Assembly (NCBI GenBank): GCA_024704765.1
Contig: JAKMXF010000346.1
Location: forward strand, 130,803 to 194,802
DNA length: 64,000 bases
Source of the DNA: Oopsacas minuta
Lineage: Eukaryota > Animalia > Porifera
Direction of reading: 5' to 3'
Below, in pieces: positions 3,761 through 56,849 of the stretch. The notes beneath the pieces are model-generated. The model searched no databases. It was not told the DNA's origin and saw only the letters and a list, made by a program, of their open reading frames with translations. The stretch's first letter is position 1, and each line of letters begins with the position of its first letter. Both the position numbers and the translations under genes were made by a program.

Positions 3761-4921
3761 TTTGATATTCTAAATTGTAGTACATGGTACCATAGCACAT
3801 AATTTGAGAAAATATTATATTTATCAACTTTACATAATTATTTGTATTTTTAAGCAATAGAACGGAATTTTATGAATTTATTATCCATAGTCCATCCATA
3901 CTACATTTATGGCTGGTGATATGAAGCTGCTACATAGTTTTGAGTTATTAATATTGGTACTTGATGCCTCGGGTTTTAAAAATTTGAAAATTTTGACTTA
4001 TTTTACAATTTATATCCATGATGGTCTAATAATGACAGAATTATTCTAGCATTTGCTCAAAGTGACGATGTCAGAATATTTCTCACATTGAGGAGTCCTG
4101 TAATTCAAGCTTCAACCATCTAACCTTTATGTTGGCTGTGCTGTAGCTAATATGGCTTACAATTACGTCTAGGTTTGTCATAGGAATGAATTTTTGTCCA
4201 AGACTTTAATTTGTCCTAGCCAGGCTGAAAATACCCCCTGTATAATGGGCTTAATTTTTTCTGAAAAATGAAAATAATCTGGGTTATAATCAATTTTCAA
4301 AATTTGATAAATATTCATTTGAGAAATTATAATCAATAAATATTCAATTAAATTTCATTAACAATTTAGTAGAGTTGATAAAGACACTCATCCTTATCAA
4401 ATCTACTTTAGATACTTCGTTTTTTTAATGCCGATCTTTTAGAGCTATTGCACCCGCCTCCATGACAGAAGTATACGAAGATGTGTAGTAATCATTTATC
4501 TGCTCATAATAGGTCCATTCTTTAGATTATTGCAATGTGTATGGTTAGCCCTATGGATCGAAGGTAAGTTAAGTAGTAGTTCTTCAGTAGTCGAACCGTG
4601 GCCCCAGTGACGGACACTAGGGGGTGCTCAAGCGCTCCCAATATATTCAACGAAATTGTGTATTCCTTAGAGAAGGTGATAGATACCACAAAATAAATAC
4701 TGGTACAAACTATAAATAAAAACGTATGTATTGGGATCAACCAATCAAGTTATAAAATTCCTATATGAAGTTCCTAATAGTTATCTAATAAATAAAATAT
4801 TTTGTTCCCATAGAAATTCCATGTTAATACTACGGATTATCGGCTTTTTGAAATGTATCCATCGATCCATAACAGTATCTAATGACAGAACTCACTATAT
4901 CCCGATTCATTGCTAGAAACA

Positions 4922-15638: not shown

Positions 15639-15863
15639 ATGACAAATAATTATTCAAATATACCTACAGCAGATAAATTGTTTGCATCTAGAGATAATCA
15701 AGACTCATTCTCTATTTCTAATCAAGTTAGAAAGATTAAAAAAGAGACTATGATTAAAGGGAAAAGATTCATCAAAGATGGAGAGAAGAGATTACCTGCA
15801 GATATGATGGCAGATGATGAGAAAATTCAAGCGAGGATTCATAAGCAATTTGAAAAACAAAGG
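15639..15863 (+). CDS. EIF2B4: eIF2B delta subunit, first coding exon (75 aa)
   Basis: Ends ...DGEKRLPADMMADDEKIQARIHKQFEKQR followed by GTTAGT donor. Splicing to 43245 gives ...KQFEKQR|VPKRK...ELFSHL, matching recalled human [33 protein letters not shown]...SLFSHL. Confidence 0.82.
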
Positions 15864-36589: not shown

Positions 36590-36830
36590 TAAATGCGAAA
36601 TTCGGATTCAGCGTATTTAGTTACGACTGCGTTGCCGTTTAGAGCAAGCATGTACCAATATTTTGAGATTTAGATAATTTGTTTACTTTATATCCATCAC
36701 AGCAGTAATAAGTTTACATATGATAATCCAAAAGTCTGAAAATCGAATTCAGCGTGCTGATATATTTTGTGAAGTTTTATTGAATTATATTTACTTCCTC
36801 GACAAACATAATTTCAAAATTGAATACAAT
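36590..36830 (-). mobile_element. Internal fragment of the non-autonomous Helitron family
   Basis: Similar to 20840-21050, 40380-40590 and (inverted) 47830-48040, e.g. ATTCGGATTCAGCG...TTGTTTACTTT...GAAGTTTTATTGAATT. Confidence 0.6.
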
Positions 36831-36869
36831 AAATCCTTTTTTTCACAATAGACAAACAAACAGTCAAAT

Positions 36870-36995: not shown

Positions 36996-37029
36996 GGCAG
37001 GATGACAGGCAACAATTGAGGTTAAATAA

Positions 37030-39329
37030 CACAGGTCAACAAAATTTAACTTCATTTTCTCATCAAGTATTAGATTGACATTTTCTAAGCTAGTTTTATA
37101 CGCTGAATTCAAATCTGCTTTCAGATTCTTTCGGCACGTCCAGGTTTTTTTCCATCTACAAGTCAACGATTTTTATGTATTTCCTAAATTTTTCCTGTTA
37201 TTTTATGGTAGTGGCTGTCTTTTTGTCTTCTTACATGATAGCCATCTGAAATAAATCAACATTTCGATGTTTTAGATTAATGCCAAAGTAATATCAGTTA
37301 TTATCCTAGCTCTTACATATAATTATTCACATTCATGCATGTATCAACTACTCACAAACTAAGGGGAAATACACATCCATCTAGAAGTATAAAGGTAGCT
37401 AACTAAATTAAAAGTGTTGAGAGTATGACTTCTATTTATATATCTTGTTGGGATTATCTCTGAAGAGCCTCCAACAGTGATCGGACATCATGCCCTCATT
37501 CCTGAAACCTTTGTATCGGGTTCCCATCTCCTGTATGTCTTGGTGGAATCTCTCACCCTAGGGAGGGGTTCATCACTTACAGCACCAAGGTTCTCAGGGA
37601 AAAATCAAGGTGAGAGCGCAAGAAGTGAAGTTTTAGCGACATGAGACAGCCCATCTTCTCGTATGCGTTAAGCAAGGTTTCCACTCCTTCTCTGTAGTTG
37701 GACGACTTCTTGTTAGCCAAAAGGTTTTCACAAACCCATTTGAATGAATTCCAAGCACACATTTCTAATTCGGATAATGTCTTCTCGAAATCTGGATCTC
37801 TGAATACTTGTCTGATTTGTGGTCCTACAAATACTCCCTCTTTTAACTTTGCCTCGCTTAGTTTCGGAAATTTGCCAACCAAATGCAGAAATCCTGCTGA
37901 ATTTGTTTTGCCCATTGTTTAACGAATGTTTTCATTAATCCAAGTTTAATATGAAGTGAGGGTAAGAAAACTTTGTTTGGGTCTACCAATGGCGAATGCT
38001 GTAAATTGGTTTTCCCCACTTCATAGGTTCTCTTCGGCCAATCACATTTTTTATAATGTTCACCAGTTGCTCGGCTGTCCCATAGACATAGGAAACAACA
38101 ATACTTTGTAAAACCTTGTTGCAAGCCCATCAATAGCCCGATTATCTTAAGATCACCGCAGATATTCCATATATGTGTTCTATACTGTATTGCCTCCAAA
38201 ACTTCCTGCAAATTGACGAAGGTTTCTCTGAGATAGACGGAGTGAGCAATTGGAACGCCAGGCTTTAGATTTCCGTTATGCACCAGAACAACTTTCAAAC
38301 TGCGTTTTGACGAGTCGATGAAAAGGCGCCAATCAGAGGTAGAATGTTCTTGTAATACGTTTGCATAGAGTCCTTCGATATCATTACAATTGCACAGTGG
38401 ACCATCAGTGGTGTAGTATTGAGCGAGATCGAAATTTCGCTTGCGATTGTGGGATACTAGGACATCTTTGTCGAGTAGGTTTTTCTGTTTGAGCCTGGAT
38501 GCAAGGAGTTCATCTTTGTCTTTAGATAAGTCTAGATCCCTGACCAGGTCATTCAATTCTCCCTGTGTAAATGTTTGTGGCTCTAGTAATTCATCTTCGG
38601 AACATAATTAGCATCTGTAGAATCTGCATGAACATCTTCCACCATATCAGACCCAATTTTAATTTGCTGTGGCTTGGGAATTGGGATTGGTAATGAGATG
38701 TCGTGTGGAATTGGCCTGCGAGCAGAATCCAAGTCTGGGTGAACAAGAGCGTGCTTATTCTTGGCTGAGAATCCTGTAATGTCGATAGGGCAAAAGTAAC
38801 AATCATCAAGGTGATTTTTCTGTTCCCTCCAGACCATGGGTATTGCAAATGGCATTGAAACTTTCCTTTTGTTCAACCAATCACGTAGTCCACTTGACAA
38901 GAAGTGCATATAACATGTGGTGCCCACGACTTGTCTTGGTCACCAAGTGGACATTCGAAGTACAATTTGTATAAGTTCTTTAATTGATTCGTGATTGGTC
39001 GTCTTTGTGATTTTACGCAAAAAAGACCACAAACGTAACAGAAATTGTCGGGATGAGTTCTACAATTACGATGCATGTTTATAATTTGATTTGATTTGCT
39101 TGAATTCAAATAAGTAAAGTCATTTATATTCCAGATAATTGAATCAAAATAGGCATGCTCATATAGCAATTTAGTAACTAGGTAATACCATACTATTGAA
39201 AAAATGGATATTGGATTTCAGAATAACTAGACGCGCTAGAGAAATTCTGATCGCAGATTCAGTTCAGCATTCAAAAGTATGCTAGGATAAATGTATGTGA
39301 TCTCTGATGAGAAATCTTGTTGAGTTGTG
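37030..39329 (-). mobile_element. Chapaev3-like (CMC) DNA transposon, copy A
   Basis: CAC...GTG termini with imperfect 18-bp TIR CACANNTCAACANNATTT. Chapa Zn-finger (H-x-CxxC...WAPHVICTSC), WRLFIDSSKRSLK, ICGDLK, LHIKLGLMK, GERFHQD. Multiple frameshifts. Confidence 0.88.
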
Positions 39330-40292
39330 TTGTCAGCCAATATACTTGATATAAGTGGGAATTGTAGTCACAGGTCGCTTAATATGTCCAATGTGCTGCC
39401 ACAATCACTTTGAATAAATGATTTCTCATCTTGGAACTCTTGCATTATGATCACGTTGCAAATTTATATTTTCCGAATTTCAGGAATTTGTATTTTGATC
39501 ATACATCAGTCATTTACTGCCGAGATTACTAGTCAAAACTCATGTATGTGCTCCATTGTCAGTACCTAAGCCCATTTTGTGTATTTTAGATGGATCATGG
39601 ATAATCTGATTTTAAAATTTCATCTACTTTATATATTCGAGTCGCAAATTGCTGGCCAAAAGTACTAAGATATTTAGCTGTTTCAGGCTTGTCCTCAACT
39701 CGATTTATTAAGCTGTCGTGAAGCTACCTAGTAACGTAGGGCGTTATTTTTATTGAATTATTTGTGAACTTAAGGAAGCCTATCTGTATTCTTTAATTAC
39801 CTGTTTTACTACATTATAACCTCAGTTTTACAAACACATCTGTATACACTACGCATTTCTTTCCTACTCAGTGTTATTTTATCCTTAACTCCCAAACCAG
39901 TATATACATGCATATGATTATAGCTCTCTGCGATACGGCCTGAAACATTATTGGGATATGGTAATATACTAGTAAATGGAAACGGTAAAAATCTCAAATC
40001 AGCCTCTGTTCCAAAGTAGGGTAGTTTGAGTTGGATTCATGTCGGTTAAAAATACTTTGGATTAATAACACTGATATACAAAATTGTGAAAAGTTTTTGA
40101 TGATTAAATAAAAATAGCTGAAATTGAATCATTTGAAGGGACTATTTATGAATGAGTTAAGTATGTATTCACAACAGGTCTATAATTTGTAATTTTCTGG
40201 TTGGAAGATTGCACCAATATGAGATTAGATATGTGAAATTATACATACATTCATGTTAATTACCTTCTAAATCATACTAATATTAACTATCA

Positions 40293-40697
40293 CTAGCGCG
40301 TTAGCTTACTTGCGCTAGCGGTTCTAACACTTCGTGTCCGTACTCGGCCTTCGGCCCTCGCTTTGACTGTTAGTTTGTGTGATATTCGGAATCAGCGTAC
40401 CCGATTACCCCACAATAACCGTTGAAACCACATTTCTAGGATTTTGAAATTTGTTTACTTTTTGTTTCCTATATATTCATATAAACCAGCTAAATTTGTA
40501 TATGACAAATCCATAAGTGTGATTCGGATCAGCACATTCGCTAACCTTTAGTCAAGTTTTATGAAATTTGTATATCTTCCTGATTAACACCATAGATATA
40601 TAGATACAAACATTTTTGCAAATATGAATTCCACATTCCATTTCAGCTTCCTTAGCAACGGACAAACGGACAGACAACAATTGAGATTTAATATAGA
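40293..40697 (-). mobile_element. Non-autonomous Helitron (405 bp)
   Basis: A|TCTATATT...GTCTGTCC 5' end, hairpins, CTAG|T 3' end. Inserted 7 bp after the stop codon of Chapaev copy C. Confidence 0.87.
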
Positions 40698-40704
40698 TTC
40701 ATAT

Positions 40705-42365
40705 TTAATCGTCTAAAAATTGTTTTTTCCTCGACTTTCTTTTGTGTAGAACGTCAGGCTTGTTGTGTTGCAAACACCAACAGTAGTCTGCCATCATACT
40801 GGAATTCCATTTTCTTTGGTATCTGTGTTCAATGTCACTAATATCCTGATGAAAACGTTCGCCTTGTTCTTCGCTTAGTGCCCAAGATTTTTTGGAAAAT
40901 AATTCAGGTGTGAGTGAAGGAAATGGATTTTTATAGACATTCTCGCACCGAGCATTTTGTAATTCTCTATTAATCTCTCGACAATGTCAGCATAGTTGTC
41001 AACTTTGTGATTTCCAAGGAAACTTTCTACCACATCACGAAAACTCAGCCAAGCTTTCCTCTGTAGGCTACTTAATTCTTTAAGAAATTCATCATCTTTG
41101 AATAGCTCCCTTATTTGTGGTCCAACGAAGATGCCACCTTTAATCTTCGCATCAGAAATTGCAGGGAATTTTTCCACGAGGTACAAAAAACTTCCACAAT
41201 CCTTGGGCAATGCCTTCACAAAATTTTTCATTAAACCAAGTTTAATGTGAAGAGGTGGTAACAAGACATCGTTAGAATCCACAAGTGGTTCTTGAATAAC
41301 ATTGTGACTACCAGGAACTAAATGGTCTCGATGCGACCACACTTTCTGGACGTAATGTCGAGCGTCTGCACGGCTATCCCACAAACACAGAAAACATGGA
41401 TATTTGGTGTAACCACCTTGTTGTCCAAGAAGTAATGATATGACCTTAAGATCTCCACAAATTAACCATCGATGCATGGTGTAATTTAGTGCATCTAGGA
41501 AGACTTTCATGCTGTCGTAAGTCTCCTTAAGTTGAAAAGAATGTGTAACTGGAATACACGCAAGCTTGTTGCCATTATGGAGTAACACTCCCTTTAAACT
41601 TCTTTTAGAGGAATCAATAAATAATCGCCATTCTTCAGGATTATATTTCACTCCAAGCTTTTCTATCAGACCAGGAATATTTCCACAATATACAAATGAT
41701 GGCTGTAAGTGAAAAAATTTAAGCAAATCTTGTTCTCTAGTTCGATATTTCGAAATATTCGCCTCCGGAAGTAGTAAATTCTTCTGTTTTAGACGTGAAG
41801 CAAGAATTTCTGAAGACGATTTTGGTAAATTAAGATCTCTTATTAGGTCATCAAGATCATCTTGATCAAAAAGCTAAGGAGAATTATCATCTGGTGGGAG
41901 TATGTACTCGTCAGAATCTCCACTACTATCATTGTCACTGCTACTGTCTAATATTTCCAATGGAACTGGTACAGGTAGGTCCTCTGAATGTGGAACTGGC
42001 CTAATGGCGGACGGTACGTCTGGGTACGCAATACTGGATTTATTCTTTTTTGTGATACCATCAATTTTCGTCATGCAGAAATAACAATCCGAAAGATGAC
42101 ACATTGGTTCTCTCCATATCATTGGAACCGCAAACGGCATTTTCTTTCTCCTCCCAGCATACCACAAGCGTAAGTTCTCAACGCATGTCTTACAAGCATT
42201 GTGTGGAGCCCAGGGCTTATCTTGATCCCCAAGATGGCATCCAAAATATGCGAAATAACAGCGTTCTACAGCCTTTGTGATATTTTGCCGTTGGTCAGTT
42301 GTAGTATACCTCCCACAAATATAACAAAACTTTTCAGGCGAATTTTTACAAACCCGAGAAGCATA
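40705..42365 (-). pseudogene. Divergent Chapaev3-like transposase, copy C (full length, three lesions)
   Basis: SRVCKNSPEKFCYICG...WAPHNACKTC through LSEEQGERFHQDI...MMADYCW. 1-bp deletion at the start, in-frame TAG at 41874, 1-bp deletion at ~40880. Termini not confidently located. Confidence 0.88.
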
Positions 42366-43244
42366 AACAATAAAATGAACAAGATAAACTAACTGTCGAG
42401 TGGAATAAAACAGATTATAGCTACTATTAGAGGCAATTTACATCATATAAGCAATTCAAACCAAATAAATGCGATAAGGGTGATGTGTAGAATTGAATTT
42501 AGAAATATTTTGACGATATAGTCAATTAAAAGACCGAAATAACTAAAATAGAAATTTCTTACTTTTTTAGTACCCCTGAGAATGAAAAAAATACATAATA
42601 ATTCCCAATGTATATCTACACTATGCAAAAATAATAGAGAAAGAAGATCATCAAAAATGTTGTATATCTGTGTAATCTGTACAGTTTGGAAGAAATTAAC
42701 GAAATTATTTGGCGTCGGCTCTGGAGTATTACGTATCATCCATGTAACTGATTTTTACTATTATCTTCTAAACTTTTCATTTACCAGATTGGTGATCAAA
42801 GTGTATATTATTGACAGCATTAAACCAGCCCTAAGTATCACAATTCTAAGTTTTTAGATCTCTGGTCATGATCAAATTTTCATTTTTCACTAAATTGTTC
42901 GGACAATCGGGTCAAAAGTACTACAATCCAGCACAATATAGAATTCTATTGCGGTACCACTGAATCAATTTGGATTCAATTCTGATTTATCTTTGTGAAT
43001 CAATCCCATATGGAGAACGTATAAAGTAGCTAGCAAAGTAAGATTTCATACAACAGAGTAACTGATGCACCTTAGTATTTATGTATATATACGTATATGC
43101 ACACATATATGTATATATCACTCAGTCATTTTCACTGAGCCACTATACTATAAAGTATAGTCGGTACAGTTTACTTCCCTCTCCTGGCCCTTCGTATAAT
43201 CTTGTGTTTTTGCGTTTTCTAATTTCTGTCCATTGAATCTTTAG

Positions 43245-43843
43245 GTTCCCAAACGTAAAGCAGCTGAAAGAACGATAGAACTCTTTTCGCATCTTTATCA
43301 GTCCGATCCATCCCATCTTATTACTGCTGATCCCAGACTGATGTTTTCCTCACATGGCATTCACCCATCAGTTTTGAAATTTGGTGGCCAATTATCCAAA
43401 AGTGATATAGCTGGTTCTAGCAGCCGTTCAGTTGCACTTCTGGCTGCCTTCCAAAATGTCATCAGTGATTACCAAACCCCTGAAAATAAGGATTTAGTTC
43501 GAGAAATCATTAAGGTTATTGAACCATGTATTAATTTTTTAAAACAATGTTGTCCACTTTCTCTATCTATGCGCAATACTGTTACATATATGAAATATAT
43601 ACTAAAAAGTATTCCAAATAATCTCGATGAACAAGGAGGAAAAAAATGGTTCTTACAACAGTCCAAAAAGTCCATTCATGCTCGCATACTTTTAGCCGCA
43701 AATATAATTTTAGATCTTGTAATTCATCAGATTAGAGATGATGATGTTATTCTTGTATATTTACCATGTGCTCTAGTGATGAATATTATATTAGAAGCAA
43801 ATTCAAGAGGGATTAAATTTCGCGTTCTAATTATTGACTCAAG
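43245..43843 (+). CDS. EIF2B4: eIF2B delta subunit, coding exon 2 (599 nt)
   Basis: Polypyrimidine/TTTAG acceptor at 43244. LFSHL, IHPSVLKFG, DYQTPEN, FLKQCCPLSLSMRN, DVILVY and FRVLIIDSR align with eIF2B-delta. Phase-2 donor AG|GTAC at 43844. Confidence 0.93.
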
Positions 43844-45639
43844 GTACTTTCTTATAGCATATAGTATAATTTTGTGTTGTTTAGATAATTCTGATCTTTA
43901 AATGTGTTTTCCAACCTCTTAATCAGGTTCCTTCACATGCAATGTTCATTCCATGAAATTTCATCATAATCTGACGCCATTTGGCTGTTGCGAAATTACT
44001 ATAATATATTTACCTGTATTTTAACTCTTATTGAAAATTTCAAATTTCCTTGGCCTGCCCCAATTATGTTACTAAGTAATATTTTCGATTATGCCGAATT
44101 ACTTCTCTGGTGCACTGTGTCCCTAAACCTCAATGATCTTTGCAAAAATGTGGCCAATGATTAGGTACGAAACCATGTATTTTTAATGTAGAATTCATTT
44201 GAAATATTTTGACATCGATTCTAGGGAACTTGAATACAAATTTCACATCTTTATCCTATCATAAAATGCATTTTATCACTGGATCTATCAGATTTTGATG
44301 TTTAGAATGTACTTTGTTTTATAAGTATCGACTGATGGAAAAAACGTCAGTAATTTTGGTTCTATTTGTAATGATATTTATTTTATAATTCTAGGGTTGT
44401 TGATTTATGAGTTCCCTAAGTGATGATAGATTACCGAGGAAAACTATGATGTTGTAATTTCGGTTATTATCCAGACGTATAAATACAGTATTGGTATTAC
44501 TATTATGTAAAACTAAATTGTTTCGATTTTCCGAAAGAGATCTATTTATGCTTCACCAACAAATACATGTTTTGATTGTTAAACAAGTGGAAATACCTTG
44601 TACAAGTAGATTTTTATATCGTAGAAATTCCTAGAATTTGATTTACCATACTCTAAAACCTAGAAAACTAAGTATCTACTTTACAATTTGAATGAATGTA
44701 GCGATTACATGACTGTCATCTTCCTATTTCAAAATCTTGTATTGTATTATTACATGGTGATCATTAATTCGTAAGGTATGTTATTATGTATGTATTCTAC
44801 CTAACTAACATATGCGTGGAATGTAATTTATGGTCTCTTTCCTCAAATTTTGGTTTGCGACCTCAGGACTTCATTAGAGATCGGACATAATATATGTCCA
44901 ACTTAGTCTAATACATTTACAGTTCTATTTCTAATAATCCAGACGATGAAATGATGTTTCTGTTAGAAATATGCAAAATTTCGAAGATTAGAAGGCCGCA
45001 TTGGACGATCTCTTAAATTCTGTTATTATATTCTATCAAGGTCGAGGCCCCATATGTTTTTAAATAGATTCAGTTAGCTTAGTGGCGTCGAACAAGGTGG
45101 TACTCGATAGTTGAGGACTAATTTTAGGATAGAATGTGCCACATTCTTGCGTCGCTATGAAAATTATTGTCGAATGTATTCAAATGCAATGCTGGCGCCA
45201 GGGGGGACGTGGTTCCTGTAGGGCTACACCAGTTTCCGTCAGGGACACATTCGTCCTTCATCATTTAATGCATCCGCTCATTTTCATTGCTTATTACTAC
45301 TTGCTGTTGCCTAAACTATAGCTATTAGTCAAATACCTAATTTGCTGAAAATTAATATTCATTGACTAAACCTCTATAATATTTCTATTCCATTATTCAT
45401 GAGTTGTCAGCATCTAGGCTTTATATTCATTTCTCCTATTCAATAATTTCCAACAATATTTCAGTGCAAGAAAATATCACCAATATATATATTCATATAA
45501 CATAGTTGAGACATTCATATTTTCATTACACTTATTGTTCAGAACATTAAATTGTTCAACTCTGTTCCTCCTGCCAATGCAAACAGAACGATGGGATAAG
45601 ACCTGAAGATGCAAGCAATAATATCGAAAAGTGACCGAT

Positions 45640-47460
45640 TTCCATCAGATTGAGGTTGTCACATATGTTTCTCTAAGGATTTGTTTACTGGACGACCTTG
45701 GCTGGAATATTTCCAGGTCGCCGATTCTGCATTTTGTTATTGTTGTCGTGCTTATCAAACATGGGCAACTTTAGGACTTTTCATATTAGAAATCTACAAT
45801 GAACAACTTCAAAGAACTGAAGGACTCGAAATGTCTGTCACTTACCTCTAGGCTTTCCAAAAACGGAAGCATTTTGCGAAAATTAGTATCTTAAGTAGGT
45901 AGGACATCCTTTACTATCCCCAATTCTTAAGACAGTGGCACTCTTCATTTTAACTTGTAGCGTTCAAGACATTTGATTTTTGGACAGTGACATGGACGCG
46001 TTGGGCAAGGTTTTCACTGTGCTGCCCGAAACAGAGGAAATCCTTTGGAGATCCTGTCCTCTTATGCAGTAAACTTATTCTTCTTTCGAAATTCTGATGA
46101 ACTAATACCGCTCAAAATGTTCATCACAACATTCCTAGTATTATTCTCACCCTGCTTACCAAGTCTGTATATCACCATATTCTACTTTCAAATATTTTCT
46201 CTACTCTGTGATGAATCTAAGCATTGAAACAAAGATTAACAAATATCAGTCTTGAGATATGCTGACAATGGGGCTATGCATGAAGTTTTCTACAATTTTG
46301 TTCAATAACACATTGAAAGCGATACTGAAAGCCATGGAAGTATACAGTTAATCTCATTTATTTCCACAATGTTATGATCTGGCAGCTGTGAAGTCGGAGA
46401 AAGAAAGGACTCCAGTCCTTCATGCTTGCTGTGCCCCAGAGGGTTATATTTCCACTGTTACGCTCATAGATAGACCAACTTATTTGTTCTGAGCTCTGAA
46501 TTTTCAATTCGCAAAATTTTTTCCTTCTTCGATCAGTTCGCACATTTAATAAGTTATTCACAGCCATAGTATCACATGATCGAATCAGAGGATTTTTTAG
46601 AATTTTTATGGGAGGCTAACCAATTTTCATGAATTAGAGGGAGTCAAAGTTTGGAGCTAAAGTGCATAACATAGTAATCATGTACTTTGCTACAAGTATC
46701 TCTTAAATACTAACACATGATTGATAATATGGTCGTTAGCGATGAATTCTAATTAGTATATTATTGATAATCATACCACTTCATTCATTAATTTTTCTAA
46801 TTTCCCAATAATGAAAAATTAACAGTGAGATTGACCATAGCTCAGGAGAGCCATTTTGCCCCCCCTCTATTCATCTAGAAAAAACCCTGATCGAATTCGT
46901 TGTCCAAAACGCTCTGTTGTTCCCAAGAAGAGGCTTGGCATGCATTTATTGACTCTTTACGTAGCATCAATCCATGGTTCTCACAAAACCCTGACAGAAT
47001 AGCTGCTGCAGAATTCATTCTAGGATTCGCACGATTTTATTGTAAATCTGGTCCTTTTCCAAGATATACTCCATATGTCAAGCATGGCGGGAACTGCCTC
47101 CAGAACAACGAAATAGACACGACCATATCGGTGGAACTCATTGCAGCTCTAAAGACCACTTTGCGAAAGTAGGCTCGTTTGAGCATTTTGGATCTCTGTT
47201 GTCCAATTAATTACTTAGCACGACATTGCACCACCAATTAAGCGCTGAGTAGGAAATGTAGAGAGGCTTCTAATCACCATATATGGGCTAAAGACGATTA
47301 GGTCAAGCTTATGACCAAGTTGTTGAGAGTTTGTGTCAGAGCTGGAAATTCGTTTTGATAACGAATAATCGTGTATTTTTAAAGCCATGACTGCCATGAA
47401 CCCATTGTCAAAGTTTTTTAAAGTATTGAAATAATGATGTCTTTTATAGAACACTACGTA
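45640..47460 (+). mobile_element. ZMYM1-like hAT relic, interrupted by a MITE
   Basis: RPWLEYFQVADSAFCYCCR (TTF-type finger), QCYDLAAV...FHCYAH and ELEIRF...AM..MNP remnants. Heavily decayed. Confidence 0.65.
46586..46889. mobile_element. hAT MITE (304 bp)
   Basis: CAGAGGATTTTTTAGA / TCTAGAAAAAACCCTG termini; 7-8-bp TSD (G)ATCGAAT. Confidence 0.8.
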
Positions 47461-47716
47461 ATTATTCAGGAATTGTTAAGAAGTAAATTTCAGCTCTTCA
47501 AAGGGGCTATACAACATTACCAAAACCAGAGTGTTAGTCTATTCTCGCTGTTTACTATTTGTATGCCCTCAGCCAGGGGCGGTCGTAGGATTTGACTAGC
47601 CCGGCCCAAAGGCAGAGCTATGAGAAACAACCTAGGTCATGTTTTTACTGTGCCAAATATCACTATTCCATAGAATAATAGCTCAGTTCTAAATTGTTGG
47701 CTCAGTATCTGCGGGA

Positions 47717-48110
47717 TCTATATTATTTAATCTCAATTAATGTCTGGTTGTTTGTTTGTTTTCTTGTCAAGGAATGGATTTACGGTATGCAATTATAAAA
47801 TTGTCGCATAACTATGTATTTATCGTTTTTTCAAGGAAGTATATACGTAGAATTCAATAAAACTTCATCAAATATATCGAACATGCTGAATCCGATTTTC
47901 ACAATTTGGATTATACATATATAAATTTATTGTTGGTTTTACGAAAATATAGTAAGCTAATTAGCTAAATCTCAAAATATACGTGCAGGCTTACTCCAAA
48001 TGGCTGCACAGGGGTAAGTAAGTACGCTGAATCCGAATTTGGAGAATAATGGATAACTCGAGGCGCAATACGCCGAGTTCATCGCGAAGCGACGAGCCAA
48101 AGGCTCGTAT
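47717..48110 (+). mobile_element. Non-autonomous Helitron-like element
   Basis: A|TCTATATT...GTTT microsatellite 5' end like 21388; body like 20900-21050; triple-hairpin cassette 48062-48108 like 20596-20641. No CTAG end. Confidence 0.72.
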
Positions 48111-48884
48111 TTATAATGTTTTCGCTCTACATTTCTCACCATAAGAGATTACACCAGCCAAATTTGGCATGTGTACTTCTAATGACAGCTAGCTGTGCGC
48201 CTGAGCTTTCAAAGATGTCTAATATATACGTTTTCATACCTTTGGACCTCTATAATTTAGCCCAATCAAATTGTAGGGTTTTGCAGTTGGGCGTAAATGC
48301 ATAAACTTAGTTCTGGTAGATATCCGTGTAGTCCATCTCGCCATATTAGCACCGTAATGTATTTGTATTGCATGAAGACAGCAATTCTATTGTTCAATAC
48401 TTTTTATTTTGTGTGTATACATAATACACTTATTTACCATATGATTAATCATATTATCACACATTTAGGAAATATTTCAATATTGTCTTAGAAATTAACT
48501 TCCGCCGGATATTAGGGGTTAACAATGACGTAGAATTCGATTCCAAACTTCCAAACGGAACTATAACTACATTCACCGCACCATCCACTTATTGAGGTTC
48601 TACTTAAGATAATATAATCCGAGTATAAGGAATAATTAAAAAGATGAGAGGGGACTAAATATTTTAGTTAGCAGAGCATAGAATGAGACACTGACCATTG
48701 ACCACTCTCTTCGTTTTATCTCTCAGGAATTATTGGACCTTGGAACACTGAAGCATGTTGATTTTCTTCGGCAAAGATCAGCTGAGATTTGGAGAGCGAA
48801 GCCTAGAGACTGAATCTACCTCTGACCTGGTATTATGGAGGAAAGACCTTAGATGCAACGAATTTTAGTCAATTCTTCAATATA

Positions 48885-49799
48885 CAGCCAAGGGACAAAA
48901 GTATTCGACCACACAAATATATTGTCATAAATTGTATACTCTTTCCCGCTCCTATATATTGTGTAGTCTATATTCGTAGCTGCAATCTAGTAATTTGCAT
49001 AGAATAACATATGTTTTTCAAGAATTTCAAATAAATATTTTCGATTTACACTTTTTGAAGGTGTTATTTATTAATAAACATTAGATAATTATTGATGGTC
49101 AAAATATGTGGTAATTCAAAACCTATTAAGAATCTATAATTTCTGACTTGATATTTGAATTCTACGTAGGCGAGTTACCCCAGATTACAATTTTCAATGG
49201 GATTGGACAATTTTTGCCAAAGTTATAGAAGAATTTCAATTTGTGCCATTTGTGCCACCTTTTGTCCAAGGTGGCACAAGTGGCCGCTACGAAGAGGTTA
49301 TTTTGTAATTCAAGGGTTAACATAGTCATATCATTCGAAGATATTACTTTGACTTATTCTTCCTAACCCTAGTTGATTTCCTTGTGGTGGCGCTTTATCC
49401 TGCTACTTGTGCCGCCTTGGGAAAAGGTGGCACAAATGGCACAAATTGAAATTCTTCTATAACTTTGGCAAAAATTGTCCAATCCCATTGAAAATTGTAA
49501 TCTGGGGTAACTCGCCTACGTGGAATTCAAATATCAAGTCAGAAATTATAGATTCTTAATAGGTTTTGAATTACCACATATTTTGACCATCAATAATTAT
49601 CTAATGTTTATTAATAATTAACACCTTCAAAAAGTGTAAATCGAAAATATTTTTTGAAATTATTGAGAAACATATGTTATTCTATGCAAATTACTAGATT
49701 GCAGCTACGAATATAGACTACACAATATATAGGAGCGGGAAAGAGTACACAATTTATGATAATATATTTGTGTGGTCGAATACTTTTGTCCCCTGACTG
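48885..49799. mobile_element. Tc1-like fold-back MITE, 915 bp with ~397-bp TIRs
   Basis: TA|CAG(C/T)CA(A/G)GGGACAAAAGTATTCG termini. Arms 48885-49281 and 49405-49799 about 97% complementary by eye; 123-bp spacer. Confidence 0.92.
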
Positions 49800-49813
49800 T
49801 ACATTAACTATGA

Positions 49814-52108
49814 CACAACTCAACAGGATTTCTCATCAGAGATACATACATTTATCTTAGCATACTTTCGAATGCTGAACTGAATCTGCGATCAGAATTT
49901 CTCTAGCACGTCTAGTTATTCTGAAATCCAATATCCATTTTTTCAATAGTATGGTATTACCTAGTTACTAAATTGCTATATGAGCATGCCTATTTTGATT
50001 CAATTATCTGGAATATAAATGACTTTACTTATTTGAATTCAAGCAAATCAAATCAAATTATAAACATGCATCGTAATTGTAGAACTCATCCCGACAATTT
50101 CTGTTACGTTTGTGGTCTTTTTTGCGTAAAATCACAAAGACGACCAATCACGAATCAATTAAAGAACTTATACAAATTGTACTTCGAATGTCCACTTGGT
50201 GACCAAGACAAGTCGTGGGCACCACATGTTATATGCACTTCTTGTCAAGTGGACTACGTGATTGGTTGAACAAAAGGAAAGTTTCAATGCCATTTGCAAT
50301 ACCCATGGTCTGGAGGGAACAGAAAAATCACCTTGATGATTGTTACTTTTGCCCTATCGACATTACAGGATTCTCAGCCAAGAATAAGCACGCTCTTGTT
50401 CACCCAGACTTGGATTCTGCTCGCAGGCCAATTCCACACGACATCTCATTACCAATCCCAATTCCCAAGCCACAGCAAATTAAAATTGGGTCTGATATGG
50501 TGGAAGATGTTCATGCAGATTCTACAGATGCTAATTATGTTCCGGAAGATGAATTACTAGAGCCACAAACATTTACACAGGGAGAATTGAATGACCTGGT
50601 CAGGGATCTAGACTTATCTAAAGACAAAGATGAACTCCTTGCATCCAGGCTCAAACAGAAAAACCTACTCGACAAAGATGTCCTAGTATCCCACAATCGC
50701 AAGCGAAATTTCGATCTCGCTCAATACTACACCACTGATGGTCCACTGTGCAATTGTAATGATATCGAAGGACTCTATGCAAACGTATTACAAGAACATT
50801 CTACCTCTGATTGGCGCCTTTTCATCGACTCGTCAAAACGCAGTTTGAAAGTTGTTCTGGTGCATAACGGAAATCTAAAGCCTGGCGTTCCAATTGCTCA
50901 CTCCGTCTATCTCAGAGAAACCTTCGTCAATTTGCAGGAAGTTTTGGAGGCAATACAATATAGAACACATATATGGAATATCTGCGGTGATCTTAAGATA
51001 ATCGGGCTATTGATGGGCTTGCAACAAGGTTTTACAAAGTATTGTTGTTTCCTATGTCTATGGGACAGCCGAGCAACTGGTGAACATTATAAAAAATGTG
51101 ATTGGCCGAAGAGAACCTATGAAGTGGGGAAAACCAATTTACAGCATTCGCCATTGGTAGACCCAAACAAAGTTTTCTTACCCTCACTTCATATTAAACT
51201 TGGATTAATGAAAACATTCGTTAAACAATGGGCAAAACAAATTCAGCAGGATTTCTGCATTTGGTTGGCAAATTTCCGAAACTAAGCGAGGCAAAGTTAA
51301 AAGAGGGAGTATTTGTAGGACCACAAATCAGACAAGTATTCAGAGATCCAGATTTCGAGAAGACATTATCCGAATTAGAAATGTGTGCTTGGAATTCATT
51401 CAAATGGGTTTGTGAAAACCTTTTGGCTAACAAGAAGTCGTCCAACTACAGAGAAGGAGTGGAAACCTTGCTTAACGCATACGAGAAGATGGGCTGTCTC
51501 ATGTCGCTAAAACTTCACTTCTTGCGCTCTCACCTTGATTTTTCCCTGAGAACCTTGGTGCTGTAAGTGATGAACCCCTAGGGTGAGAGATTCCACCAAG
51601 ACATACAGGAGATGGGAACCCGATACAAAGGTTTCAGGAATGAGGGCATGATGTCCGATCACTGTTGGAGGCTCTTCAGAGATAATCCCAACAAGATATA
51701 TAAATAGAAGTCATACTCTCAACACTTTTAATTTAGTTAGCTACCTTTATACTTCTAGATGGATGTGTATTTCCCCTTAGTTTGTGAGTAGTTGATACAT
51801 GCATGAATGTGAATAATTATATGTAAGAGCTAGGATAATAACTGATATTACTTTGGCATTAATCTAAAACATCGAAACATTGATTTATTTCAGATGGCTA
51901 TCATGTAAGAAGACAAAAAGACAGCCACTACCATAAAATAACAGGAAAAATTTAGGAAATACATAAAAATCGTTGACTTGTAGATGGAAAAACCTGGACG
52001 TGCCGGAAAGAATCTGAAAGCAGATTTGAATTCAGCGTATAAAACTAGCTTAGAAAATGTCAATCTAATACTTGATGAGAAAATGAAGTTAAATTTTGTT
52101 GACCTGTG
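49814..52108 (+). mobile_element. Chapaev3-like transposon, copy B (inverted near-identical twin of copy A)
   Basis: Same termini and same translated ORF pieces as 37030-39329; >99% identical by manual comparison. Confidence 0.9.
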
Positions 52109-52799
52109 TAATTAATTTCATGAATTATAACTCGGCTTCTGATGGATTTTGGATAAGTGTTTTTGGTCACTAATGGATTGTATTTGTAAAGGGCTTTAAT
52201 TTCTGATATTTTTTGTTATTTGATGCTACCCATTGGGTAAATACTTATGGATTACACTTCTTTTTTGCGAAAAGTTTGATTTGAATGCAACTGAATTAGT
52301 TAGCCTAAATTTTTAACAATACAATGCCGGAATTTAATACTTTCCAATCCAAAATTTCGTGCAATTCCACTTGGTTCTACAGCAGAAACTGATACAGCAG
52401 AGAATAATATTACATTACTGCTAAATTTGCTACTTTTATCTCAAAGTGCACATGGCGGATGTTTTCGAACCTTATTGCTGGAATAAATGCAGTAACTGGG
52501 TGCATCCCCTCATTTTGGCCCCAAGATGTTTGCTGATATTGATTAATTTTTCTAGCTAGTTTATGAAGAAGAGTGTGAATTCAGAAACTGTTTATTGGAA
52601 GGCTATAGTGACTCTGAACGTTTAGTAGCATATAATTGTGATTCTTGTAAAGTAGTTGTGATGTCTGTTTCTGATAATTTGTTGAGGCAATTACTATGCG
52701 GATTGATTCCCTCCTAACTAATCTACTTTATTTTTGTCTATTTTGTATGCCATCCCTCGAAAATAATACAAGGGTTATTTACTGCTCTTAAACCAACGA

Positions 52800-54131
52800 G
52801 TGTGAAGTTAGCGCAAGATTTTCCTGAGCACACTTCAGTTGCAAATATGAAGCATTTCTCGTTTTTGGATTTTCATTTCAATTGGAGAACAAGTAGAAGG
52901 CATAGGGACGTTTATGAATATTAATACTCTTTTGAATTTTCGAATTTATTTTGCATTTTTTTGAGCATTACAAAATAATTCTTTTTCACATTTTTTTCGA
53001 AATCAAAATTTCAATTATCTGAACCTGTTTCAGAACATTGGACGTTTGTTATGTCAACATTTTGCAACATTTTGTTAACATTCCTGTCAGGTTTTCCAAG
53101 CTTTCACATTTTTTATGTTCACATACTACTATTTTTCATATACTTAGTTTTATTTAAATTTAATATGCAGAACAAGTAGAAGGCAGAAGGACGTTTATGA
53201 ATATATGAAATAATTTTGAATTTTGAAGATTATTTTGTAATATTTTTTATCATCATAAAGAACTTTTTCTGAACACTTTTCGAAATTCAAATTGCAACTA
53301 TCTGAGTATGATCACGAACTATGGGCGTTTGTTATTGAAAATTTTTGAATTGGTTGGCTTTCCTGTGTCCTGAGTGTAAGATACACACTCAAGAGATGTC
53401 TTCCTTATGTAACTTAATACAATTGTTTGAATTTGATATTTATGTCACATCATGTTCTAACACTCCAAACTAGTTAGATTTAGGCGTTACGAACATTCCC
53501 TATGACAATTTTGTTTGATATAACCCTCGCAATTCATCAATATCATAAATTATATTCTACTTCAATGTAACAAATACATCTTTTCAAATTCTTACTGCTC
53601 AACAGAAAGGAAGAGTCAATGGAAAAAAAGTACCTACTTGTACATATACTTTCATTGACTTTTCTTTATCTGCTGAGCAGTAATAATTTGAAACGATTTA
53701 TGTTGTTCCAGTGAAGCAGAATATAATTTGTGATATTTATGAGTTGTGAGGGTTATATACAATCAAAATTTGCACAGGGAATGTTGGTATCGCCTAAATC
53801 TAAGTAGTTTGGAATGTTAGAGAGCATCTTACACTCACGACACAGGAAAGTCAACAAATTCAAATTTTTGGCATAACAAACGTCTAATGTTCTGAATAAT
53901 GTCCAGATAGTTGAAATTTGAACTTCCAAAAAAGTGATAAGAAAGATTGTTTTTTGTGATGGTTATAATATTGTATAATTGTTTTTTTCAAAATTCAAAA
54001 TCTTTTTTTAATATTCATAACATCCCTATGCCTTCTACTTGTTCTCCAATTTTTTTCCAAATCCAACCACAAGAAGTGCATCAAATTTACAACTGAAGTT
54101 TGCTCAGTAAAATCTTGCGCTAACTTCACAC
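52800..54131. repeat. 1.33-kb diverged fold-back element with one-arm ~280-bp duplication
   Basis: Perfect terminal 23-bp IR GTGTGAAGTTAGCGCAAGATTTT. Inverted similarity continues to a centre near 53635. Block AGAACAAGTAGAAGGCA...ACGTTTATGAATAT occurs at 52887 and 53169, and inverted at ~54011-54048. No TSD. Confidence 0.85.
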
Positions 54132-54199
54132 AAGTCTCAAACCAAGCTACATGCAGCTTCTCCATTACAAATTATTTCTTTGATAGAAACTCTCAGCTA

Positions 54200-55507
54200 C
54201 AGGGTGGCTGCTAAGTTCTGATGCAAATAATTTTCTCCATTATATTTTTACAACTTGGAATATAATGTTAATATTGCATATACGACTATTTACTACTGTT
54301 ATGATTCAATTACTAAAATAGTTATTCTATATATCCTCCTTTTTTGGAAATTACAGCCTTGAGTCTGGTAGGGAAACTTTCCACTGCAGCAGGCACGGTT
54401 TCCGGGGTATTTTCTCCATTCGCGACATAAAGACTTTTCAGGGACTTTATAGTGCTGTGTGAAACCGAACAAGCCCTATTCTCCAAGATGGACCAAAGAG
54501 AATAGTCAATTGGATTTCTGTCAGGACTACATGGAGGCCCTTCTTCCTTTCGGATAAAATCGGGGATTTTGCCCTCTAACCAGTCCTGTGTGGTAATCGC
54601 CGTAGGAGCAGGAGCACCATCTTGTTGTAAAACAAATGGCTGTCCGGAAAGCATTGTCTGACTCAGGTCTTTACAACAGTCTCTAGGATCAAGTCCTTGT
54701 AGGTTTTCGCGTTGATTTTCACTCCAGCAGGTACGAAAATCAATGGCGTGCGGCCAACAGCAGAGACACCAGCCCAAATCATCACTGAGAGAGGTTTCAT
54801 TTTCCGACTGATGTACCTAAACTTATCGGGGATCTCTGAGATAGCTGTAGAGATCACACGATCATTTTGAACATTCGTAGCCTCAGCTATTGTGAAAATC
54901 ATTTCATATGTAAAGATGATATTTTCGAGTGCGCCGGTAGCGTGTCTTGCAAGTAATGCCTTGCTTCACAACAATCGTTTTGTCTTGACTAACTCTGAGA
55001 GGAAGTGTACTTTCTTTCTTTTAAAACAATGCATTTTCAAGTCATTGTGTACCACTTTTTGGACAGTTTGACGTGCAACTTTCAACTCCTTGCCCATTTT
55101 TCTCATGGATAACCATGGATTTCGCCGCCATCCGTTCTCTCACCCTCTTCTTGAGGTCTGCGGTTCTCACAGAACAAGGACAACCAGATTTTGGTTTGTC
55201 GTTCGTGTCCCCAGTTCATTGTAACGTTTTATTATCCTGTAGATGAATGCTCTCCGTCCTTTAGCAATATTTAACATGTTTAAAATCTCAGGAGGGTTTT
55301 TCCCGCCTTGTATAATTCAATAATTACTGAACTCTCATGACTCATGGTCAATAGTATAAATTTTTGTGAAAGATTTAGGTTAAATCGAATTTGAATGCAT
55401 TAAGAAGGTTATATGAAAAGTCCTAGATAGTCAAAATACTGTAAATGCATTACGATCAAGGTTATATTGGAATTGAATTTTGGTATCAGAACTTATCAGC
55501 CACACTG
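54200..55507 (-). mobile_element. DD37D Tc1/mariner element, decayed
   Basis: 23-bp TIR CAG(G/T)GTGGCTG(C/A)TAAGTTCTGAT with TA TSD. QQDGAPA...SPDRNPIDYSLW motifs. Confidence 0.9.
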
Positions 55508-56356
55508 TAAATATTTGTGAAATTAACAATAATAAACCATGTTTTTCTACATGTATATTCTGTGTGATCATGTTTACTTCGATACATGAAAATTGTATTT
55601 GTATATTATCTTAATGGGTGAAACTATTATGATAGTTCCATGCCGTTATCATAATTCTCAAGCTAGTTCTTAACATGAAATTTCCTTGCTATACCTCCTT
55701 AACTTATATAGGTTCTACTGTACCCAAACGTTCTTTTTCTATTACAAAACTGTGGTTGGGTGGAGCTTCATTCATTGCTACGCCTAACCTGCTACCAAAT
55801 ATTTGTGTATATATCTGAGCGTTTAGTACTAGATTTCAATTTTAGTATAATCATTGTAACTTTTCATGATGTGTATATTTGTATGCAAGACTGTGTGAAA
55901 TTGTGATGTCAGGAATTGGATCATATTAAAGTTGCTCTACAAATCAAATTTGAATAATCAAAACATCAATATTCACTGAGCAGTCTCGAATTTATGTGAA
56001 TTCGATTAGCCAAAAGGTGACAATTTATCTATCTTTGCGTACAAAGGTATGCGTTTTATCCAAGCCTCTGACATGCCTGCACTAGCATATCCATATAGCC
56101 CAGGGTTGAAAAAGAATGAAAATTTGTAGTCTCCTGCTTATGCTTGAAATTTCGTTTGATCGAATTTGTCAATTGTAATCCGTAACAGGGACTCAAATCT
56201 TATACTTTTATCTGTTGATATTTATGTCATCAATCATATTTTTTATTTCTAATCATTTTATTTGGTGTAAATATCACTCACTGGCTACACTTCCATGCTG
56301 TTTGCTAGAAATCCTTTCTTTTTGTTTGCCATTCTAAATATCTTCTCTTTATTTAG

Positions 56357-56849
56357 ACCTGATTTCCGTGGATTGGAATGCGCTCGAGTATTTTCTAATC
56401 AGGGAATTTCATGCTCTTACCAACTTCTTAGTGCTATGACTTTCGCTATTAAAGAATGTAGTTTAGTTCTAGTAAGCGTTGAAGGAATATTTTCTAATGG
56501 TGCTGTACTTGGAAATGTCGGAACTTCAATGATATGCCTTGTAGCCAAGATGTACAACGTTCCTATCATGGTTTGCTGTGAGAGTTTTAAATTTATTGAC
56601 CGAGTTCAAATTGATGCATTTGTTTATAATGAACTCGGAGATTCAGATGAAGTTTCTAGATTACCCGATGGCAGATTCGGTCCATTATACAAATGGAAGG
56701 ATATTGACGCACTGAGGATCCTAAATTTGAAATATGATATTACTCCTCCTGAACTAATTGATGTAATTGTTACTGAGAGTGGAATGATACCTTGTACATC
56801 CATACCAGTTATATTACGTTTACAAACTAGTATAGAGCGTTTCGATTGA
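56357..56849 (+). CDS. EIF2B4: eIF2B delta subunit, last coding exon
   Basis: TTTATTTAG acceptor completes the AGA codon (DSR|PDFRG). NVPIMVCCESFKFIDRVQIDAFVYNEL and LNLKYDITPPELIDVIVTESGMIPCTSIPVILR are diagnostic of the IF-2B delta C-terminus. Exons total 225+599+493=1317 nt = 438 aa + stop. Confidence 0.95.

What the first reader, a model, noticed from the sequence alone, without database searches (positions are those of the whole stretch)
37030..52108. Near-identical inverted 2.3-kb Chapaev copies bracket EIF2B4 exon 2
Seen: copy A (minus, intron 1) and copy B (plus, intron 2) are >99% identical, 10.5 kb apart, with the 599-nt exon 2 between them. Known: reverse-complementary intronic repeats flanking an exon promote back-splicing (circRNA), exon skipping and A-to-I editing, and are substrates for inversion. 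Inference: the pre-mRNA can form a ~2.3-kb duplex looping out exon 2. Skipping would frameshift (599 is not a multiple of 3), and recombination would invert an exon of an essential gene. This is a possible TE-made regulatory switch or a strongly deleterious young allele. The outer ends are both flanked by TAA (37027-29, 52109-11), while neither copy has its own clean TSD.
Basis: partly seen in the sequence, partly recalled or inferred. Interest (0 to 1): 0.75.

Follow-up and report, generated by a model that had tools for sequence, protein, structure and literature searches.

The report
Inverted transposon pair around eIF2B-delta exon
Two almost identical, oppositely oriented, dead copies of a known kind of DNA transposon (Chapaev3) sit in the two huge introns either side of the middle exon of an essential translation-factor gene, probably in a glass sponge; the arrangement is real and could make the exon circularise or be skipped, but nothing shows that it is more than ordinary transposon litter.

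Summary
Copy A (37030-39329, minus) and copy B (49814-52108, plus) are 99.3% identical, 10,484 nt apart, and bracket a 599-nt exon. The element meets the published Chapaev3 hallmarks: about 2.3 kb, CAC...GTG ends, and a TWA duplication between A and T. The gene is a single-copy, three-exon eIF2B delta with introns of 27.4 and 12.5 kb.

The functional reading has no support beyond general rules. The matching outer TAA flanks are a coin flip, because this family duplicates only TAA or TTA. The pair is not special to this gene. The family has at least 40 copies, all 30 examined are defective, and its closest pairs are mostly neighbouring inverted pairs. One pair is a clear gene-conversion mosaic, and another has crosswise duplications.

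In A/B, 4 of 12 differences lie in the first 58 nt of the inner ends, so the high identity may reflect homogenisation rather than youth. Both inner junctions lack a duplication, and A's abuts a truncated older repeat. This remains unexplained.

ADAR-type and Dicer-type genes exist, so back-splicing, editing or siRNA are plausible but untested. I rate this a new member of a known kind, of modest interest. The scan read this same stretch twice before.

The parts
37030..39329 (-). Copy A: defective Chapaev3 element, 2300 nt, in intron 1. Its 3' end faces outward (left) and its 5' end faces inward.
   Evidence: reading frame broken into four pieces
49814..52108 (+). Copy B: defective Chapaev3 element, 2295 nt, in intron 2. 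Its 5' end faces inward and its 3' end faces outward (right).
   Evidence: longest ORF 356 aa against about 556 aa expected
37027..37029 (.). Outer flank of A: TAA in canonical A|TAA context
39330..39332 (.). Inner flank of A: TTG, not a TWA site and no match to the outer flank
49811..49813 (.). Inner flank of B: TGA, one base away from TAA
52109..52111 (.). Outer flank of B: TAA in canonical TAA|T context
15639..15863 (+). eIF2B delta exon 1: ATG to AGG|gttagt, 75 codons, phase 0
   Evidence: weak tblastn hits of homologues just before their exon-2 part; sequence read
43245..43843 (+). eIF2B delta exon 2, 599 nt
   Evidence: Pfam IF-2B E 3e-19; PDB delta subunit residues 167-363, E 1e-32; splice sites
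56357..56849 (+). eIF2B delta exon 3, the last exon, ending in a stop codon
   Evidence: PDB delta subunit residues 364-521, E 1e-44
39333..39745 (+). Older interspersed repeat truncated at A's inner end (profile positions 327-766). Its left part, about 250 nt, is absent from the locus.
40875..42167 (-). Relic of a different Chapaev3 subfamily (about 49% amino-acid identity) in intron 1
48880..49804 (.). Complete 925-nt foldback element (over 40 copies in the genome), ending 9 nt from B's inner end

Best explanation
Copies A and B are two defective passenger copies of a roughly 2.3-kb Chapaev3-type cut-and-paste DNA transposon. They lie in opposite orientation in the TE-swollen introns 1 and 2 of the single-copy eIF2B delta gene. 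The genome's statistics match the glass sponge Oopsacas minuta. Together with a third copy 38 kb upstream they form a local cluster that shares an inactivating frameshift, so they could only have moved in trans. Their near identity comes either from a late local copying event or, slightly more likely, from gene conversion between neighbouring copies, a process shown to operate in this family. At the RNA level (inferred, not shown) the pre-mRNA can fold into a 2.3-kb duplex that loops out exon 2. By the known rule for complementary intronic repeats, this would favour back-splicing or skipping and would offer a substrate to the ADAR-type and Dicer-type enzymes the genome encodes. Nothing indicates that this effect is selected or regulated.
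For: Identity and coordinates. Family: at least 40 full-length copies at 93-96% identity, plus a 98% copy on the same contig. Chapaev3 hallmarks: CAC...GTG ends and a TWA duplication between A and T in about 22 of 28 copies, as published (PMC4079192); motifs CFLC, PLH, HFLHSH and the D/D/E positions; top fold matches are HzTransib and RAG1. All 30 copies are defective, and A, B and L003 share a frameshift. Gene model. Single copy. Conversion in the family: L008/L014 differ by 5.9% in the first 373 nt and then have 0 differences over 1275 nt (P<5e-5). In A/B, 4 of 12 differences fall in the first 58 nt of the inner end (terminal test P=0.003, scan P=0.02), a region that is not hypervariable in the family. 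A/B is the only long complement between the two introns. Duplex energy. Two dsrm+A_deamin loci and Dicer_dimer loci. Genome statistics against PMC10280926.
Against: There is no RNA evidence of any kind. Conversion does not explain why the 3' ends of A and B are identical to the last base, although that region is the most variable in the family. Both inner duplications are spoiled, and A would need two changes, which is unlikely even for old copies (about 20% of copies have an imperfect duplication). A's inner flank is a truncated older repeat, which calls for an extra deletion or rearrangement. The three sites where A groups with L003 against B can be explained by a CpG site and a homopolymer, so they do not prove a mosaic.
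Confidence: 0.7

Rival explanations
1. TE-made regulatory switch: the duplex is used to tune eIF2B delta output through exon-2 circularisation or skipping, or to feed siRNAs against Chapaev3.
For: The geometry fits the known rule: inverted complements in both flanking introns and canonical splice sites. ADAR-type and Dicer-type genes are present. The pair is kept nearly identical.
Against: The same kind of near-identical inverted pair recurs elsewhere in the family, so the arrangement is a property of the element rather than of this gene. There are no RNA data and no conservation data. The copies are decaying pseudogenes.
Confidence: 0.06
2. A young, strongly deleterious allele: one copy was inserted very recently by local transposition, and the arrangement damages an essential gene.
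For: Identity is 99.3-99.7% against about 96% for the family. The 3' ends are identical to the last base. Local hopping fits three related copies within 56 kb. Related subfamilies keep intact ORFs and partly similar ends. Skipping exon 2 gives an immediate stop.
Against: A fresh insertion should carry a perfect duplication, and neither copy has one. No intact copy of this family was found among the 30 examined. Differences cluster at one end. This is the only eIF2B delta gene in the assembly, so the arrangement is compatible with life.
Confidence: 0.15
3. The two facing 5' ends were cut together by a RAG/Transib-like Chapaev3 transposase and rejoined to their own flanks (open-and-shut repair). 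This destroyed both inner duplications, deleted part of the older repeat at A, and left repair errors near the ends.
For: Both 3' flanks are canonical and both 5' flanks are altered while the termini themselves are intact. An older repeat is truncated at A's inner end. Changes cluster within 58 nt of the 5' ends, and all five substitutions there are A:T to G:C. The transposase fold is closest to HzTransib and RAG1, which make hairpins on flanking DNA.
Against: The numbers are very small. A loss of about 250 nt is more than typical end processing. No intact transposase of this family was found. The mechanism has not been shown for Chapaev3. The reasoning is post hoc.
Confidence: 0.12
4. Assembly artefact: only one copy exists, and the second is a mis-assembled duplicate.
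For: Near identity; several of the indels lie in homopolymers.
Against: Homology ends exactly at the element termini, with four different flanks that each occur once in the assembly. The copies carry distinct substitutions. A 2.3-kb repeat 10 kb apart is easy for the long reads that the published assembly used (PMC10280926).
Confidence: 0.03
5. The 15-kb block moved as a composite transposon, or was inverted by recombination between the copies.
For: The outer flanks are both TAA. A sister pair, L019/L020, has crosswise duplications that suggest an inversion there.
Against: Exon 2 is collinear and in frame with exons 1 and 3, so the block is native and in its native orientation. The TAA match is a 50% chance. 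Crosswise comparison of the A/B flanks also fails (CAA against TAA, TGA against TTA). The missing half of the older repeat is not next to B.
Confidence: 0.03

Closest known systems
Chapaev3 transposons (Merrow, Garfield, Conan; Zhang et al. 2014, PMC4079192; Kapitonov & Jurka 2008 as cited there)
   Same: Length is about 2.3 kb (the published silkworm consensus is 2,289 bp with a 556-aa transposase). Termini are 5'-CAC...GTG-3'. The 3-bp duplication is TWA, inserted between A and T. The transposase carries the C(2)C, LH and H(4)H motifs and is encoded in a single exon.
   Different: This is a new host lineage (apparently a hexactinellid sponge) and a family not compared with Repbase here. Copies A and B themselves lack matching duplications.
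Complementary intronic repeats that drive exon circularisation (Alu pairs in mammals, DNAREP1 pair at Drosophila laccase2; reviews PMC5042038, PMC6769675; details from general knowledge)
   Same: Reverse-complementary repeats lie in both introns flanking a single internal exon with canonical splice sites.
   Different: The arms are about 2.3 kb and almost perfect, far longer than the 30-300 nt usually involved, so editing or dicing may dominate. The host has a mean intron of 341 bp. No circRNA has been shown.
Concerted evolution of nearby inverted repeats by gene conversion (for example palindrome arms; general knowledge; also noted for gene pairs in this genome by earlier scan notes)
   Same: The central parts of the repeats are identical and the ends divergent. 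This is clear in the sister pair L008/L014 and suggestive in A/B.
   Different: The units here are dispersed transposon copies 10-80 kb apart, not palindrome arms. For A/B the pattern rests on only four differences.
Alternative transposition of paired elements (Ac/Ds reversed-ends and sister-chromatid transposition; V(D)J open-and-shut and hybrid joints; general knowledge)
   Same: Two element ends face each other, and the flanks at exactly those ends are altered.
   Different: The predicted duplication patterns (a direct repeat at the two inner flanks, or crosswise matches) are not met, and the intervening exon is in its native orientation.

Membership tests
Chapaev3 DNA transposons | Invariable 5'-CAC ... 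GTG-3' termini with terminal inverted repeats | tested here: met
   All 30 copies start CACAAC... and end ...CCTGTG. Three other subfamilies also start CAC and end GTG.
Chapaev3 DNA transposons | 3-bp TWA target duplication, inserted between A and T | tested here: met
   About 22 of 28 other copies have a perfect TAA or TTA duplication (two have TAG or TAT) in A_T context. Intact relatives show the same. Copies A and B individually do not: their 5' flanks are CAA and TGA.
Chapaev3 DNA transposons | About 2.3-kb element encoding one transposase of roughly 556 aa with C(2)C, LH, H(4)H and DDE motifs | tested here: met
   The family ORF spans element positions about 250-1919. Intact relatives encode 563-575 aa. 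CFLC, PLH, HFLHSH and conserved D, D, E columns are seen. The ORF is broken in A and B.
Chapaev3 DNA transposons | Transposase core of the RAG1/Transib-like RNase H fold, with an N-terminal Chapa zinc finger | tested here: inconclusive
   The AF2 model is weak overall (pLDDT 56; core 70-90). Even so, more than 30 top Foldseek hits are HzTransib (E 3.6e-5) and RAG1. The Atlas gives only leads, to clusters with RAG1_RNase_H and RAG1_imp_bd. Pfam gives no hit.
Chapaev3 DNA transposons | Phylogenetic placement among Repbase Chapaev3 transposases | not testable with these tools
Intronic-complement-driven circRNA locus | Reverse-complementary sequences in both introns flanking the exon, stronger than within-intron pairings | tested here: met
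   A/B scores 4072 bits. The next inter-intron inverted match scores 169 bits, and within-intron pairs score 219 bits or less.
Intronic-complement-driven circRNA locus | Back-splice junction reads resistant to RNase R | not testable with these tools
Composite (macro)transposon | The whole block is flanked by one duplication and is foreign to the site | tested here: not met
   The outer TAA/TAA match is a 1-in-2 chance. Exon 2 inside the block continues exon 1 and exon 3 in frame.
Recombination-mediated inversion between inverted repeats | Crosswise matching duplications and an inverted intervening segment | tested here: not met
   For A/B, the crosswise pairs are CAA against TAA and TGA against TTA, and exon 2 is in its native orientation. 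The feature is met in part by the sister pair L019/L020.
Gene conversion (concerted evolution) between copies | Mosaic of identical tracts and tracts with family-level divergence | tested here: inconclusive
   L008/L014 is a clear mosaic. For A/B, 4 of 12 differences fall in the first 58 nt (6.9% against 0.36% elsewhere; P 0.003 to 0.02), but the 3' end is fully identical.

The most novel reading that the evidence does not exclude
The pair is maintained as a near-perfect 2.3-kb hairpin inside the pre-mRNA of a housekeeping gene and has a function. Either it is a constitutive source of small RNAs against Chapaev3 elements, or it is a dosage valve for eIF2B delta through circularisation or skipping of exon 2. 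The second case would also be the first example of complement-driven back-splicing in a sponge. A weaker form of this reading: the A:T to G:C changes at the inner ends are footprints of transposase-induced breaks or of RNA-guided repair.
Probability: 0.06. Interest if true: 0.65.

Novelty: new member of a known kind. Interest (0 to 1): 0.3.

Why it matters
This is a clean natural test case. A single-copy, essential translation-factor gene sits in a compact early-branching animal genome with a mean intron of 341 bp. Its middle exon, whose length is not a multiple of three, is bracketed by the strongest possible intronic complement. Existing or new RNA-seq could show directly whether complement-driven back-splicing, hyper-editing or hairpin siRNA production operates in sponges. 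At the DNA level, the family shows that neighbouring copies of a RAG/Transib-related transposon exchange sequence. This warns against dating insertions from pairwise identity. If nothing is found in RNA, the locus is simply a tolerated pair of intronic transposon relics.

Tried and rejected
1. Composite-transposon origin. Rejected because exon 2 is collinear with exons 1 and 3.

2. Inversion by recombination or duplicative inversion. The crosswise flank comparison fails, and the exon orientation is native.

3. Reversed-ends reinsertion of the intervening segment. This predicts the same 3 nt at both inner flanks, but TTG and TGA are observed.

4. Empty-site test. The four flanks are unique in the assembly apart from embedded repeats, so no paralogous empty site exists. 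A profile of the older repeat at A's inner end did not find its missing half anywhere near A or B.

5. The three sites where A groups with L003 against B, taken as proof of a mosaic. Set aside, because they are a CpG site, a homopolymer indel and one transition.

6. Orientation bias of same-contig pairs. The count is 12 inverted against 5 direct over all listed copies, which is not significant.

7. Pfam scans of the transposase: no hit.

8. Exon 1 by composition: nothing found. It was then found through weak tblastn hits of homologues.

10. The large word-based protein search was not used, since the family scans plus the literature settled the element's class.

11. The joined, spliced eIF2B delta protein was not assembled or searched.

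12. The contig is not human: sponge-like statistics, 40% identity to the nearest named eIF2B delta (a limpet), and dense animal DNA transposons.
Full report
OBSERVATION. The repeat finder on 35-54 kb reports three gap-free inverted blocks of 417, 1035 and 701 nt at 100% complementarity, plus a 108-nt block. blastn joins them into one match, 37025-39330 against 52113-49813. It is 99.26% identical over 2308 columns, with 8 mismatches and 5 gaps. Using the ends defined by the rest of the family, copy A is 37030-39329 on the minus strand and copy B is 49814-52108 on the plus strand, with 10,484 nt between them. Homology stops exactly at the element termini on all four sides. The non-repetitive parts of the four flanks occur only once in the assembly.

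THE ELEMENT. A DNA search of the window's own assembly (61,460,524 bases, 365 contigs) finds at least 40 full-length copies of about 2.3 kb at 93-96% identity. It also finds a third, 98% copy on the same contig, 38 kb upstream of A and in A's orientation. Aligning the ends of 30 copies shows termini CACAAC...CCTGTG. It also shows a 3-bp duplication that is TAA or TTA (twice TAG or TAT), always between an A and a T, and about 22 of the 28 other copies have a perfect duplication. These are the published hallmarks of Chapaev3: 5'-CAC...GTG-3' ends, a TWA duplication inserted between A and T, a 2,289-bp consensus and a 556-aa transposase with C(2)C, LH and H(4)H motifs (PMC4079192).

Intact relatives of other subfamilies in the same genome encode single-exon proteins of 563-575 aa. 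These carry CFLC, PLH, HFLHSH and conserved D/D/E columns and have perfect duplications. Pfam has no model for them. An AlphaFold model built from nine genomic relatives is weak overall (pLDDT 56; core 70-90). Its Foldseek hits are nevertheless uniformly HzTransib (E 3.6e-5) and RAG1. This agrees with the published placement of Chapaev and Chapaev3 next to Transib (PMC4411706).

None of the 30 copies of this family has an intact ORF. A, B and the upstream copy share a frameshifting deletion and about 30 other derived states, so they are a defective local lineage.

THE GENE. Pfam IF-2B matches exon by exon on the plus strand. Against the PDB, exon 2 aligns with human eIF2B delta residues 167-363 (E 1e-32) and the last exon with residues 364-521 (E 1e-44), ahead of the alpha and beta subunits. 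Homologues found with the exhaustive HMMER search give weak tblastn hits at 15750-15866, immediately before their exon-2 part. The ORF there starts with ATG at 15639 and ends AGG|gttagt at 15863.

The model is exon 1 15639-15863, exon 2 43245-43843 (599 nt) and exon 3 56357-56849. That gives 1317 nt of coding sequence, with introns of 27.4 and 12.5 kb. Joining exon 1 directly to exon 3 would read ACC TGA, so skipping exon 2 truncates the protein at once. It is the only eIF2B delta in the assembly; the next paralogues are 30% and 21% identical.

The assembly's size, contig number and G+C content equal those published for the glass sponge Oopsacas minuta. That paper reports a mean intron of 341 bp and 15% DNA transposons (PMC10280926), and an earlier scan note names the same species. 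The nearest named homologue is a limpet protein at 40% identity. The contig is not human.

DOES THE PAIR SAY ANYTHING SPECIAL? Because the family duplicates only TAA or TTA, that match has a 1-in-2 chance and carries no information. The block cannot be a composite transposon, since exon 2 continues exons 1 and 3 in frame.

More telling is the family context. Among 30 copies, the most similar pairs are mostly same-contig inverted pairs. L019/L020 are 19 kb apart and identical over the whole element. A/B come next. L023/L025 are 64 kb apart at 99.0%, and L008/L014 are 78 kb apart at 98.7%. One other pair at this level of identity lies on two different contigs (L021/L024, 99.35%), and one is in direct orientation (A with the upstream copy, 98.8%). 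L008/L014 is an unmistakable mosaic, with 22 differences in the first 373 nt and then none for 1275 nt (P<5e-5). L019/L020 have crosswise duplications (TTA/TAA and AAA/TTA), as expected after a crossover between inverted copies. Neighbouring copies of this family therefore exchange sequence, and near identity of a neighbouring inverted pair is a recurrent property of the element, not of this gene.

HISTORY OF A AND B. Of the 12 differences inside the element, 4 lie in the first 58 nt of the 5' ends, which face inward. That is 6.9% divergence against 0.36% elsewhere (terminal test P=0.003, scan P=0.02), and the family is not hypervariable in that stretch (4.1%). This is what unconverted old ends would look like, so the pair may be two old insertions that were later homogenised.

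Against this, the 3' ends are identical to the last base, although that region is the most variable in the family.

Both 3' (outer) flanks are canonical, but both 5' (inner) flanks are not: [A]TTG-T and A-TGA[B] on the plus strand. Each is one A-to-G change away from a TWA site. Restoring that base would mend B's duplication (TAA/TAA) but not A's (TAA/TTA).

A's inner flank is an older interspersed repeat cut at profile position 327. Its missing left part, about 250 nt, is not on the other side of A, nor near B, nor elsewhere nearby. A deletion or other rearrangement therefore touched that junction.

With the two flank changes included, all five substitutions at the inner ends are A:T to G:C. 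The numbers are too small to interpret. One possibility, given the Transib/RAG-like fold, is that the two facing 5' ends were cut together and rejoined to their own flanks. I give that about 0.12.

I rate conversion at about 0.5, a late local copying event at about 0.35, and other histories as the remainder. These sub-questions do not change the main verdict.

LIKELY EFFECT (INFERRED). A/B is by far the strongest complement between the two introns, at 4072 bits against 169 for the next match. Within-intron pairings are weak. Duplex energy is about -1070 kcal/mol per 600 nt. By the established rule that complementary repeats in flanking introns favour back-splicing (reviews PMC5042038, PMC6769675), exon 2 is a good candidate for circularisation or skipping. 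The genome encodes two dsRBD-plus-deaminase (ADAR-type) loci and Dicer-type loci, so editing or dicing of such a long duplex is possible. None of this could be tested.

VERDICT. This is a real, correctly described structure made of a known transposon type, in a known kind of circRNA-prone geometry, and recurrent in this family. There is no evidence of a function or of strong harm. The damaged inner junctions and the sequence exchange between neighbouring copies are the only unusual points.

Noticed in passing
L031 (G000:C315:146500-153500) 2577-4304 minus; L062 1302-3020; L034 2750-4462 minus; L061; L064; L032 2895-4604: At least three other Chapaev3 subfamilies in this genome keep intact single-exon ORFs of 563-575 aa. 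They have CAC...GTG ends and perfect TAA, TTA or TAT duplications, so the superfamily may still be active. One subfamily's ends (CACTGCTCAACAA) resemble those of the A/B family.
   Followed up: partly
L019 and L020 (G000:C342:153514-155800 minus and 174858-177145 plus): A second inverted pair, 19 kb apart and identical over the whole 2.29-kb element. Its duplications match crosswise (TTA/TAA and AAA/TTA), which suggests an inversion by recombination between the copies.
   Followed up: partly
L008 and L014 (G000:C301:202303-204594 plus and 282568-284861 minus): Inverted copies 78 kb apart that are 5.9% divergent over the first 373 nt and identical over the next 1275 nt. This is a clear gene-conversion or recombination mosaic.
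   Followed up: yes
window 40875-42167 minus: A relic of a different Chapaev3 subfamily (about 49% amino-acid identity to A/B) lies between copy A and exon 2, in A's orientation.
   Followed up: no
window 15864-43244 and 43844-56356: The two eIF2B delta introns are 27.4 and 12.5 kb, whereas the published mean intron for this genome is 341 bp. They are packed with transposons; earlier scan notes place a Transib-type and a Helitron-type element in intron 1.
   Followed up: partly
window 48880-49804: A complete 925-nt foldback element with long inverted arms and more than 40 genomic copies at 91-93% identity, ending 9 nt from copy B's inner end.
   Followed up: partly
window 36631-36868: A short interspersed repeat of about 240 nt with hundreds of first-look candidates in the genome. 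A related copy in inverted orientation lies at about 47827-48040 in intron 2.
   Followed up: no
G000:C111:926471-928802 minus; G000:C343:251080-253155 plus; G000:C321:639153-639443; G000:C49:20665-20967: There are two loci with a dsRNA-binding domain directly upstream of an adenosine-deaminase domain (ADAR-type). There are also Dicer dimerisation domains inside open frames of about 1500 aa.
   Followed up: no
L033 (G000:C301:405500-412500) about 3500-4800: A copy of the A/B family whose ORF is intact up to a run of N (a withheld stretch), so its state could not be judged.
   Followed up: no
window 39330-39332, 49811-49813 and the first 58 nt of each copy's 5' end: All five substitutions at or near the inner ends are A:T to G:C, and four of them are A to G on the gene's sense strand. 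The other private substitutions in the element are G to A. The sample is too small to interpret.
   Followed up: partly
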